A DNA stretch of 64,000 nucleotides from Macrostomum lignano (taxonomy: Eukaryota): NCBI GenBank assembly GCA_002269645.1, contig NIVC01002744.1:43393-107392 (forward strand). Reading direction: 5' to 3'. This document shows positions 20,901 through 23,900 of the stretch, in pieces. The notes under the pieces are model-generated. The model was given only the letters and a program-made list of their open reading frames with translations, had not been told where the DNA came from and made no database searches. Within the stretch, counting starts at the first letter, position 1. Every line of letters starts with the position of its first letter. The position numbers and the translations under genes are program-made.

Positions 20901-23900
20901 TATGGGGAATGGGGACAGAGTGTGGAGACACTGTATGGGGACAGAGTGTGGGGACACTGTATGGGGACAGAGTGTGGGGACACTGTATGGGGACAGAGTG
21001 TGGGGACACTGTATGGGGACAGAGTGTGGGGACACTGTATGGGGACAGAGTGTGGGGACACTGTATGGGGACAGAGTGTGGAGACACTGTATGGGGACAG
21101 AGTGTGGGGACACTGTATGGGGACAGAGTGTGGGGACACTGTATGGGGACAGAGTGTGGGACACTGTATGGGGACAGAGTGTGGAGACACTGTATGGGGA
21201 CAGAGTGTGGGGACACTGTATGGGGACAGAGTGTGGGGACACTGAGGGGACAGAGTGTGGGGACACTGTATGGGGACAGAGTGTGGGGACACAATGTATG
21301 GGGACAGAGTGTGGGGACACTGTATGGGGACAGAGTGTGGGGACACTGTATGGGGACAGAGTGTGGAGACACTGTATGGGGGCAGAGTGTGGGAACACAG
21401 AATTCGAAGTATATGCGTGAGGTTTGTGGCACGCACTCATGTTCTTGCCGAGGTGGGCCACCGTTAAATCTGAAATGAAGAAGAAATTTCAAATTTCAAA
21501 TTTCAAGTTTCAAATTTCAAATTTCAAATTTCAAAGCGAGTAGCACGAGATGCAGTTCAGAGCTGATTGCTCACGTTGTCAGTTCCGTAGCGGATGGCTG
21601 CTCGTAAACATTGCTGCCTCTGAAACTATAAAATTAAAAGGCGCAATCAGAGCACTTGATGGTGCAATACGGAATTCTGAGTCTCATGTACTTCAAGTGG
21701 CAGGCGGCTCTCACCCAGAGTCTGCTTCCGATGGGTGCTGTGAGGCCAGATTCCCTCTGAGGGTGCGGAGTTCGGGGTCTTTGAAGCTTTACAGTGCGGC
21801 AGGGATAGAGAATTACAGGCTTGGATTGAGAATTACAGGCTTGGATAGAGAACTACAGGCTTGGATAGAGAATTACAGGCTTGGATAGAGAATTACAGGC
21901 TTGGATAGAGAATTACAGGCTTGGATAGAGAATTACAGGCTTGGATAGAGAATTACAGGCTTGGATAGAGAATTACAGGCTTGGATTGAGAATTACAGGC
22001 TTGGATAGAGAATTACAGGCTTGGATAGAGAATTACAGGCTTGGATAGAGAATTACAGGCTTGGATAGAGAACTACAGGCTTGGATAGAGAATTACAGGC
22101 TTGGATAGAGAATTACAGGCTTGGATTGAGAATTACAGGCTTGGATAGAGAACTACAGGCTTGGATAGAGAATTACAGGCTTGGATAGAGAATTACAGGC
22201 TTGGATAGAGAATTACAGGCTTGGATAGAGAATTACAGGCTTGGATTGAGAATTACAGGCTTGGATAGAGAACTACAGGCTTGGATAGAGAATTACAGGC
22301 TTGGATAGAGAATTACAGGCTTGGATAGAGAATTACAGGCTTGGATAGAGAATTACAGGCTTGGATAGAGAACTACAGGCTTGGATAGAGAATTACAGGC
22401 TTGGATAGAGAATTACAGGCTTGGATAGAGAATTATAGGCTTGGATAGAGAATTACAGGCTTGGATAGAGAATTACAGGCTTGGATAGAGAATTACAGGC
22501 TTGGATAGAGAATTACAGGCTTGGATAGAGAATTACAGGCTTGGATAGAGAATTACAGGCTTGGATAGAGAATTACAGGCTTGGATAGAGAATTACAGGC
22601 TTGGATAGAGAATTACAGGCTTGGATAGAGAATTACAGGCTTGGATAGAGAATTACAGGCTTGGATAGAGAATTACAGGCTTGGATAGAGAATTACAGGC
22701 TTGGATAGAGAATTACAGGCTTGGATAGAGAGCCAATAGGCTGTATTGAGAACAGGGCGCACCTGCATGCACTCAGAGCTTCATTACCATACCAAACTCT
22801 TATTTACCTTCCATTTTGTGAGTTTGATAACCGGTCGGCGACCCTGCGGGGTCAGAAAAACACAAACACTCGTAAAGTCGAAAAAGTGGAAAACAAGTTT
22901 ATTGTGTTGGTGCCATACAAACAATGGGCTGTTTGTGAGAGCTCACGTGTAATTTTCTTCAGATTCTTCAGATTTTCTTCAGATTGTGTCCTCAGCCTTT
23001 GGCCTCCGTTTGCTGCGGTTAAGCAAAAATGGTTAATACAAGTGTAAATATGCTCTGCCTGTAGCTAAATTCCTATAATACATTTTCATTACAGCCCCAT
23101 CACCCCAGCCCCATCACTACAGCCCCATCACTCCAGCCTCATCACTACAGCCCCATCACTCCAGCCCCATCACTCCAGCCTCATCACTCCAGCCCCATCA
23201 GTCCAGCCCCATCTCTCCAGCCCCATCACTTTAGCCCCATCACTCCAGCCCCATCACTCCAGCTCCATCAGTCCAGCCCCATCACTCCAGCCTCATCACT
23301 CCAGCCTCATCACTCCAGCCTCATTACTCCAGCCCCATCACTCCAGCCTCATCACTTTGAGAACTACTTCACTGTCTGAAGCCTACCGGAATCGAACCCC
23401 CAACGTGACGCCGACCGCAATGACGCAGGCCGCCACCGCCACGGCTGCGCCGCTCCCCGCGATGATGGCGGCGAGATTCTGCGGGCCTCCGCCTTGTTGC
23501 CATGCGGTGAACTTGGCGAACCCAGCCGTTCTGCACTGCGTGGAGCTGCAGCCGCTGAGGGCTACAAAGTACTCGGTGTCCTTTGTTAGTCCGTGCGATT
23601 CGTCCATCAGGAAGTCGAACTCGGCGATCCGCGACACCTCCGTGACGTCGACGACTCGCCAGGAGGGGCGGCTGGCGGCGTCCGGGTGGGCGGAGCCGTT
23701 GAAGGGCTGCGGCTGGTTGAGCTCGAGATGGTGGCGCTCGGCCCAGACTCCGAGGATGAGGAACCTGGTCATTGAATACAAAAATTGCGATTTGTTCTGA
23801 CTTCTAGCATATTTTTGTTTTTAACAGATAGTGTCTGTCTAACAGGTGCCATCAGTGTCTAACAGGTGCCATCAGTGTCTAACAGGTGTCATCAGTGTCT

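What the first reader, a model, noticed from the sequence alone, without database searches (positions are those of the whole stretch)
23387..23500. Gene B is an anti-Lepore-type hybrid with the crossover in a 16-bp window of the transmembrane codons
In transcription order the array is C, (A5'-C3'), A, the pattern left by unequal crossover. In exon 3, B matches A through GGGPQNLAAII (C has GGGKQNLVVII). B matches C from SGAAVAVAAC...RFR onward, including the extra codon (exon 378 nt in B and C, 375 in A) and the 14-bp repeat in intron 3. The last C-type site is 23451 and the first A-type site is 23468, so the switch lies in 23452-23467. The break falls where it swaps the whole intracellular domain while keeping the ectodomain.
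Basis: seen in the sequence. Interest (0 to 1): 0.8.

Follow-up and report, generated by a model that had tools for sequence, protein, structure and literature searches.

The report
Hybrid receptor gene in flatworm tandem array
The middle gene of three tandem membrane-protein genes in this Macrostomum lignano (flatworm) window really is a front-of-A/back-of-C hybrid, but the sharp switch in its transmembrane codons is most likely the edge of a recent gene-conversion patch laid over an older duplication, an ordinary kind of gene-family recombination.

Summary
In exon 3, B equals A at all 11 variable sites down to 23468. It equals C at 5 of 6 sites from 23451 on, including the extra codon (exact max-chi-square p = 0.002). 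The exception is 23397, so B ends GVRFR and C ends GIRFR.

The flanks agree. B's 5' side aligns only with A, and its 3' side only with C. The locus reads X-Y-X-Y-X: a 0.43-kb exon-3 block X, the only DNA shared by A and C, brackets a duplicated ~9-kb unit. This is the layout expected from unequal crossover within X.

A single crossover does not fit, however. A and B show no substitutions across A 14183-17223 / B 23452-27122 (0 in 2,257 bp compared). The rest of the two units differs by 5.6% (117 in 2,097 bp) plus indels. The identical patch has a second sharp edge, 34 repeats into a 16-bp minisatellite.

Best reading: an older unequal-crossover duplication made B, and recent A/B gene conversion then set the present 16-bp switch. 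A crossover between diverged haplotypes, or an assembly artefact in this neopolyploid genome, cannot be excluded without reads. The mechanism is well known, so interest is modest.

The parts
23452..23467 (-). 16-bp invariant window holding the A-type to C-type switch in exon 3 of gene B (codons I-I-A-G-S of the TM segment)
23387..23764 (-). Gene B exon 3 (378 nt): membrane-proximal ectodomain, TM segment and RFR stop-transfer; AG|G acceptor and CG|GTAGGC donor
14121..14495 (-). Gene A exon 3 (375 nt, lacks one GGC codon)
31795..32172 (-). Gene C exon 3 (378 nt)
14105..14535 (.). Homology block X, copy 1 (A). X is the only DNA shared by A and C. Homology starts 16 bp into intron 3 and ends about 40 bp into intron 2, with a weak extension into a 20-mer repeat up to 14637
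23371..23804 (.). Homology block X, copy 2 (B, the hybrid copy)
31779..32211 (.). Homology block X, copy 3 (C)
14105..23370 (.). Tandem unit 1 (X, A 5' part, intergenic, B 3' part)
23371..31778 (.). Tandem unit 2 (X, B 5' part, intergenic, C 3' part)
14183..17223 (.). Zero-substitution tract, A copy: exon 3 5' part, intron 2, exon 2, intron 1, exon 1, promoter region and the first 34 units of the 16-mer minisatellite
23452..27122 (.). Zero-substitution tract, B copy. It is longer only because (TAGA)n has 252 copies against 95 in A, with a 14-bp interruption at 25552-25565
16680..17786 (.). 16-bp minisatellite upstream of A. Units 1-34 are identical in order to B's array, then the composition is different. 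This is the far edge of the identity tract
26579..27522 (.). 16-bp minisatellite upstream of B
25980..26061 (-). Gene B exon 1 (signal peptide MRAATGLSASLPAVLLQLLSLCLRCLL); A copy at 16081-16162
24079..24223 (-). Gene B exon 2 (145 nt); A copy at 14809-14953; the C paralogue at 33413-33557 is also 145 nt and only about 45% identical in amino acids
19081..21618 (-). Gene B C-type cytoplasmic-tail exons: about 21618-21574 (NVYEQP), 20169-20107 (EYIYDVP..), 19872-19828 (ENAYDEA), 19735-19673 (MQNFAAVPNSAY), 19176-19081 (SAYMYM..LEYQR). All are open, and they differ from C at 17 of 306 nt
28206..30494 (-). Gene C cytoplasmic-tail exons (30494-30450, 29651-29589, 29354-29310, 29220-29158, 28301-28206)
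11321..13503 (-). Gene A's own, unrelated tail exons (13503-13426, 13353-13294, about 13078-13033, 11399-11321 including the stop)
34721..34796 (-). Candidate exon 1 of gene C (MLRTLSCRNTRALLLLALWAVRCPT, phase-1 GTAAGA donor)
   Evidence: inference from ORF, hydrophobicity and splice phase

Best explanation
Two steps produced what is seen. Step 1 is older. Two diverged paralogues, A and C, encode single-pass membrane proteins and share only the ~0.43-kb exon-3 block X. They misaligned and recombined within X (unequal crossover, i.e. non-allelic homologous recombination). This duplicated the ~9-kb interval between them and created B, with an A-type promoter, signal peptide and ectodomain and a C-type TM end and tyrosine-motif tail. 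The two units then diverged to about 5.6% and acquired indels. Step 2 is recent. A non-reciprocal exchange (interparalogue gene conversion) between the 5' parts of A and B erased all differences over at least 3.0 kb. One end of that tract lies in the TM codons at 23452-23467. The other lies between units 34 and 35 of the upstream 16-bp minisatellite. The original crossover lay at that point or further 5' within X and has been overwritten. What is shown: the hybrid pattern, the X-Y-X-Y-X periodicity, the step in divergence and both tract edges. What is inferred: the order and nature of the events, and the direction of conversion, which is unknown.
For: B is a hybrid at the exon level and in its flanks. 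Unit 1 and unit 2 align across the whole inter-X interval, including the region upstream of the A and B promoters beyond the identical tract: 17877-18096 against 27596-27821 differs by 7.3%. B therefore already had an A-like upstream region before the recent event. There are 0 substitutions in 2,257 bp inside the tract against 117 in 2,097 bp (2.1-13.4% per segment) outside it. At the outside rate about 126 substitutions would be expected inside. The far edge is sharp: 34 minisatellite units are identical in order, many of them rare variants, and the arrays are unrelated thereafter. Exon 3 is itself a patchwork between A and C, with 2 differences in columns 1-261, 9 in columns 262-297 and 5 plus an indel in columns 298-378, so repeated conversion in this family is plausible. 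A and C are otherwise old paralogues: exon 2 is about 45% identical in amino acids, has the same 145-nt length, and the introns carry microsatellites at the same positions. PMC4041002 states that conversion and unequal crossover yield the same chimeric pattern, and describes a two-step conversion-plus-anti-Lepore history in dolphin beta-globin.
Against: No reads, second individual or related species were available, so neither the timing nor the reality of the array has been tested independently. A 3.0-3.7 kb tract is long for gene conversion. The (TAGA)n array inside the 'identical' tract differs greatly (95 against 252 copies, with an interruption in B), which requires rapid microsatellite change afterwards or assembly error. 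No protein carrying the hybrid junction was found among M. lignano database proteins.
Confidence: 0.5

Rival explanations
1. This is the reader's model, amended: one unequal crossover at 23452-23467, but between two diverged haplotypes or homeologues. The two unit copies were then never identical. The haplotypes happened to be identical by descent from X up to the minisatellite and about 5.6% diverged beyond it.
For: The C, A5'-C3', A topology and the in-register switch fit. It needs only one exchange at this locus plus one historical recombination in the minisatellite. M. lignano carries three paralogous subgenome copies (PMC10733133).
Against: It requires haplotypes with 0% divergence over 3 kb directly next to 5.6% divergence, a 617-bp indel and remodelled arrays. 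Reported local divergence between subgenome copies is about 2%, not 5.6%. The patchwork of exon 3 shows that conversion acts here anyway.
Confidence: 0.2
2. This is an assembly artefact. The true locus has only A and C with one unit Y between them. Two haplovariants or homeologous versions of Y were strung in series through the similar X blocks, which created a fictitious hybrid exon.
For: The published M. lignano assemblies are known to contain collapsed and wrongly expanded haplovariants (PMC10733133). Averaged over the unit, Y1 against Y2 differs by about 2-3%, near the reported paralogue level. No database protein carries the junction peptide, while several carry A-type or C-type exon 3. 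The gene model P0010 confirms only the adjacency of Y1 to A.
Against: The window has no Ns and the join is perfectly in register. The usable overlap is only about 430-530 bp at 93-95% identity, which is short for a long-read overlap. Divergence is sharply bimodal (0% and 5.6%) rather than uniformly about 2%. The two copies carry different array lengths, so separate reads support each. The protein searches are lossy: P0010, 98% identical to the query, was missed. Absence of a hit is therefore weak evidence.
Confidence: 0.18
3. B arose by conversion alone. B was an independent third paralogue that became chimeric only through conversion from A, or from C, with no unequal crossover.
For: Conversion alone can mimic Lepore-type chimeras (PMC4041002), and a conversion-like patch is seen.
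Against: The two units are homologous over their whole length, with both ends in X. The outer flanks of A (3') and of C (5') have no DNA similarity to the units. That periodicity is the footprint of a duplication whose breakpoints lie in X. Homology upstream of the tract (7.3% divergence) shows that B had an A-like 5' flank before the recent event.
Confidence: 0.08

Closest known systems
Haemoglobin anti-Lepore duplications (HBB/HBD fusion flanked by HBD and HBB; Hb Miyada and P-Nilotic in humans, fixed fusions in laurasiatherian mammals, PMC4041002)
   Same: The hybrid gene lies between both parental genes. Its 5' part comes from the downstream parent and its 3' part from the upstream parent. 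The switch is in register inside a coding exon, and the intergenic interval is duplicated.
   Different: The two halves of the duplicated unit here are of very different age (0% against 5.6%), so one crossover is not enough. The parents share only a 0.43-kb block rather than whole-gene homology. The history is closer to the two-step conversion-plus-crossover one described for the dolphin gene.
Glycophorin GYPA/GYPB hybrids (for example the GP(B-A) Dantu type), formed by unequal crossover and gene conversion (PMC11073628 abstract; details from my own knowledge)
   Same: These are single-pass membrane proteins in a tandem array. The hybrids join the ectodomain of one paralogue to the TM segment and tail of another. 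Both crossover and conversion are at work.
   Different: There is no sequence relationship. The flatworm proteins match no Pfam family. No population or phenotype data exist here.
KIR and other immune-receptor hybrid genes formed by non-allelic homologous recombination (PMC2816608)
   Same: A tandem receptor family in which recombination recombines ectodomains with alternative signalling tails, in a repeat-rich locus.
   Different: An immune or paired-receptor role for the flatworm genes is speculation from the tyrosine motifs in the tails (YDVL, NPYD, YMYM in C/B; TTYAEI in A).
Minisatellite-associated gene conversion (polar variant-repeat exchange at human minisatellites; my own knowledge)
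   Same: The identity tract ends inside a minisatellite, with a shared ordered block of variant repeats followed by unrelated repeats. X itself is bracketed by minisatellites.
   Different: Here the tract extends 3 kb out of the array into a gene. No pedigree or sperm data exist.

Membership tests
Anti-Lepore-type unequal-crossover duplication product | The hybrid gene is flanked by both intact parental genes, in the order upstream parent, hybrid, downstream parent | tested here: met
   In transcription order: C (exon 3 at 31795-32172), B (23387-23764), A (14121-14495). All have open exons and conserved splice sites.
Anti-Lepore-type unequal-crossover duplication product | The hybrid's 5' part comes from the downstream parent and its 3' part from the upstream parent, with one in-register switch | tested here: met
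   B = A at 11 of 11 sites 5' of 23468 and B = C at 5 of 6 sites 3' of 23451. The flanks are exclusive to A (5') and to C (3').
Anti-Lepore-type unequal-crossover duplication product | The whole interval between the parents is duplicated, with breakpoints in the shared homology | tested here: met
   The layout is X-Y-X-Y-X. Unit 1 (14105-23370) aligns with unit 2 (23371-31778) end to end, and A and C share only X.
Anti-Lepore-type unequal-crossover duplication product | A single event: the two copies of the duplicated unit are of one age along their whole length | tested here: not met
   0 substitutions in 2,257 bp against 117 in 2,097 bp, plus a 617-bp indel.
Anti-Lepore-type unequal-crossover duplication product | A copy-number polymorphism or a reciprocal Lepore-type deletion exists in the population | not testable with these tools
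   No reads and no other individuals were available. Exact-protein look-ups found no other contigs.
Interparalogue gene-conversion tract | A patch of much higher identity, bounded on both sides by the background divergence of the paralogues | tested here: met
   The edges are at 14182|14183 to 14198 in A (23452-23467 in B) and at 17223|17224 in A (27122|27123 in B). Divergence outside is 5.1% on the left and 7.3% on the right.
Interparalogue gene-conversion tract | Non-reciprocal transfer, with the donor unchanged | not testable with these tools
   An outgroup or pre-conversion allele is needed.
Assembly false duplication | A gap, a scaffold join or an out-of-register overlap at the junction | tested here: not met
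   The window has no N, and the exon-3 hybrid is in register with an intact frame.
Assembly false duplication | Halved read depth, or no read spanning the junction | not testable with these tools
   No read data were available.
Known protein domain family for the A/B/C products (FN3, Ig and others, as suggested by UniProt names) | A significant match to a curated domain model | tested here: not met
   Pfam gives no family at E <= 1 for any of the three models. The UniProt names of the relatives contradict one another. The AlphaFold2 model has pLDDT 50 and shows only a beta-rich ectodomain and a TM helix.

The most novel reading that the evidence does not exclude
B is a real, expressed domain-swap receptor. 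It has the same promoter and ligand-facing ectodomain as A but is wired to C's tyrosine-motif signalling tail. The A/B 5' ends are kept identical by ongoing, minisatellite-bounded conversion. This would be a flatworm analogue of the paired receptors with alternative tails seen in vertebrate KIR-type and glycophorin families.
Probability: 0.2. Interest if true: 0.45.

Novelty: new member of a known kind. Interest (0 to 1): 0.3.

Why it matters
If the array is real, it is a clean, datable case of exon-anchored recombination. A short homogenised exon serves as the only recombination substrate between otherwise unalignable paralogues. The result is a new gene that joins one ectodomain to a different cytoplasmic tail. 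The case also shows that a sharp 'crossover point' can be the edge of a later conversion tract rather than the original breakpoint. For M. lignano genomics it is a concrete test locus for separating true tandem paralogues from expanded haplovariants. The mechanisms are textbook and the proteins are uncharacterised and lineage-specific, so the wider significance is limited.

Tried and rejected
1. Independent sequence support for the junction. Exact-protein look-ups of the B and A exon-3 ORFs and of P0007 found no contigs. Three word-indexed protein searches and one exhaustive phmmer search returned only M. lignano UniProt (ML2 proteome) entries, none with the hybrid junction. The index is lossy, because P0010 was missed, so this absence carries little weight.

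2. Naming the protein family. Pfam gave nothing. The UniProt names (Ricin B, F5/8 C, LAM_G, PLAT, Transposase, FN3...) contradict one another and were ignored. The weak phmmer hits to long repeat proteins (P0015-P0017) look like chance or low-complexity matches. The single-sequence AlphaFold2 model was too poor (pLDDT 50) to justify a fold search, so none was run.

3. Site 23397, where B = A inside the C-type part. I considered it as evidence for patchy heteroduplex repair. I rejected that as unnecessary, because other C-type family members also carry Ile there. A substitution on the C lineage after the B/C split explains it.

4. Right-anchored ungapped comparison of the 16-mer arrays. It was out of register and uninformative. 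The unit-code map was used instead.

5. Scans of the metagenome, viral and prokaryote-genome collections were not run, because those collections do not hold flatworm genomes.

Full report
ORGANISM AND GENES. The exon-3 peptide matches only Macrostomum lignano proteins, at 78-98% identity (UniProt A0A1I8*). The window is therefore from this free-living, neopolyploid flatworm. Three genes lie on the minus strand. I rebuilt their models from tblastn hits and splice sites.
- A and B have exon 1 (signal peptide, 16162-16081 and 26061-25980), exon 2 (145 nt, 14953-14809 and 24223-24079) and exon 3.
- C has a candidate exon 1 at 34796-34721, exon 2 at 33557-33413 (also 145 nt) and exon 3.
- Exon 3 encodes the membrane-proximal ectodomain, the TM segment and an RFR stop-transfer.
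- The B and C tails are a string of small exons, each with a tyrosine motif (NAYEQP, EYIYDVL, NPYDEA, SAYGAS, SAYMYM, LEYQR).
- A's tail is unrelated (VCDRHTAQ..., GYTTYAEIL...).
- No Pfam family matches any of the three proteins. A single-sequence AlphaFold2 model is of low confidence (pLDDT 50) and shows only a beta-rich ectodomain and a TM helix.

THE OBSERVATION.
- B equals A at all 11 variable sites from column 13 to column 297 (23752 to 23468).
- B equals C at column 314 (23451), at the 3-bp indel, and at columns 362, 374 and 376.
- The gap between the last C-type and the first A-type site is 23452-23467.
- One site breaks the pattern. At 23397 B has the A state, so B ends GVRFR and C ends GIRFR. 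Other C-type family members also have Ile there, so a substitution on the C lineage is enough to explain it.
- An exact maximum chi-square test on the 17 informative sites gives p = 0.0019.
- The flanks settle the matter. 5' of the block, B aligns with A and not with C. 3' of it, B aligns with C and not with A.

THE LARGER STRUCTURE. A and C share only a 431-bp block, X. It starts 16 bp into intron 3 and ends about 40 bp into intron 2, with a weak extension into a 20-mer repeat.
- Their exon 2 peptides are only about 45% identical.
- Their intron layout is nevertheless conserved: the same exon-2 length, a TAGA-like microsatellite in intron 1 and a 20-mer minisatellite in intron 2.
- A and C are therefore old paralogues whose exon 3 was homogenised later.
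- The locus reads X-Y-X-Y-X. Unit 1 (14105-23370) and unit 2 (23371-31778) align along their whole length.
- This is what homologous unequal exchange between X of A and X of C would leave. In that sense 'anti-Lepore-type' is a fair description of the topology.

WHY ONE CROSSOVER IS NOT ENOUGH. A single exchange duplicates the unit at one moment, so both halves should be equally diverged. They are not.
- From A 14183 / B 23452 to A 17223 / B 27122 there is no substitution in 2,257 bp compared directly.
- The only differences there are two 1-bp indels and the length of (TAGA)n, which has 95 copies in A and 252 in B, with a 14-bp interruption in B.
- The rest of the units has 117 substitutions in 2,097 aligned bp (5.6%; 2.1-13.4% per segment), many small indels and a 617-bp segment present only in unit 1.
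- At the outside rate, about 126 substitutions would be expected inside the tract.
- The identical stretch has a second sharp edge. The 16-bp minisatellites upstream of A and B share their first 34 units in exactly the same order, including many rare variants. They then have unrelated compositions.
- Beyond the arrays the units are homologous again at the old level (7.3%). B therefore already had an A-like upstream region before the recent event.

A patch of identity with two edges, set in older homology, is the signature of gene conversion or an equivalent double exchange. PMC4041002 makes the same general point for beta-globins: conversion and unequal crossover give the same chimeric pattern, and two-step histories occur.

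BEST EXPLANATION. An older unequal crossover within X created B and the duplicated unit. A recent A/B conversion of at least 3.0 kb then reset the 5' part. The 16-bp window is the edge of that tract. The original junction lay at that point or further 5' within X, because immediately 3' of the window B is C-type with old-level divergence (2 differences in 95 bp). Exon 3 is itself a patchwork between A and C, with 2 differences in columns 1-261, 9 in columns 262-297 and 5 plus an indel in columns 298-378. This shows that exchange recurs here. Apart from the one in the TM codons, every recombination boundary abuts or lies in a minisatellite.

RIVAL EXPLANATIONS.
- A single crossover between haplotypes or homeologues that were identical up to the minisatellite and about 5.6% diverged beyond it gives the same sequence. 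It cannot be excluded, but it needs an unusual pair of haplotypes. Reported local divergence between M. lignano subgenome copies is about 2% (PMC10733133).
- An assembly artefact is a real concern, because published assemblies of this species contain collapsed and expanded haplovariants. I also found no database protein with the hybrid junction. Against it: the window has no Ns, the join is in register, the usable overlap is only about 0.43-0.53 kb at 93-95% identity, divergence is bimodal, and the two copies carry different array lengths.
- One independent gene model (P0010, A0A1I8FMR1) runs from a B-specific tail exon, through the unit-1-only insert, into gene A. This confirms unit 1 next to A, which all the models predict.

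FUNCTION. B keeps open tail exons and conserved splice sites. Its tail differs from C's at 17 of 306 nt, 12 of them non-synonymous. The changes include loss of the NPxY motif (NPY to NAY). The tail therefore looks weakly constrained. Whether B is expressed is unknown.

VERDICT. The mechanisms are well known and the genes are uncharacterised, so interest is modest.

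Noticed in passing
window 14121-14495 vs 31795-32172: Exon 3 is a patchwork between A and C: 2 differences in columns 1-261, 9 in the 36 bp of columns 262-297 (GGGPQNLAAII vs GGGKQNLVVII), and 5 plus a 3-bp indel in columns 298-378. Exon 2 of the same genes is only about 45% identical in amino acids. Exon 3 has been homogenised between otherwise old paralogues, leaving one ancient-looking patch.
   Followed up: partly
window 13869-14084, 23092-23356, 31514-31764; 14567-14637, 23836-23906, 32291-33201: The shared exon-3 block is bracketed by minisatellites in all three genes. 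A 14-mer lies about 30 bp downstream, with a different unit in A than in B and C. A 20-mer lies upstream, with 3.5 copies in A and B and more than 30 in C. A-C homology stops 16 bp into intron 3, just before the 14-mer arrays.
   Followed up: partly
window 9666-10062 vs 15014-15345 and 24284-24615: A 17-bp minisatellite (CCCACAGCACCCACCAC) downstream of gene A is an inverted copy (about 88-91% identical) of the array in intron 2 of A and B. This forms an inverted repeat pair about 5 kb apart around A's 3' exons.
   Followed up: no
window 8651-9235 (+): An open exon encodes the C-lobe of a protein kinase domain (Pfam Pkinase E = 1.7e-25, PK_Tyr_Ser-Thr E = 1.1e-24). It is convergent with gene A. 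From memory it resembles DSTYK-type kinases, which I did not test. The database model P0011 wrongly fuses its antisense strand to an A-type gene.
   Followed up: partly
window 18097-18713: A 617-bp segment is present in unit 1 only (unit 2 has 12 bp there) and has no other copy in the window. Part of it (18703-18750) is used as an exon in the database gene model P0010.
   Followed up: partly
window 390-8600, 38126-38939, 40647-44956, 48389-56547, 56552-57931, 59395-60558: The density of long tandem arrays is extraordinary. They include multi-kb arrays at 4964-8597 and 48.4-56.5 kb, and an (AGAC)n array at 38126-38939 that matches 2378-3036 in inverted orientation. Much of the window outside the three genes is satellite-like.
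   Followed up: no
window 63381-63776 (+): An ORF with weak C2H2 zinc-finger matches (below Pfam's cut-off) lies next to other ORFs at 62-63.3 kb. It may be a fragment of a mobile element.
   Followed up: no
UniProt entries A0A1I8* (P0001-P0014): The M. lignano database relatives of one and the same small gene family carry mutually contradictory names (Ricin B lectin, F5/8 type C, LAM_G, PLAT, ANF receptor, Transposase, Zonular occludens toxin, FN3). Many contain frameshifted stretches. The names are not usable as evidence.
   Followed up: yes
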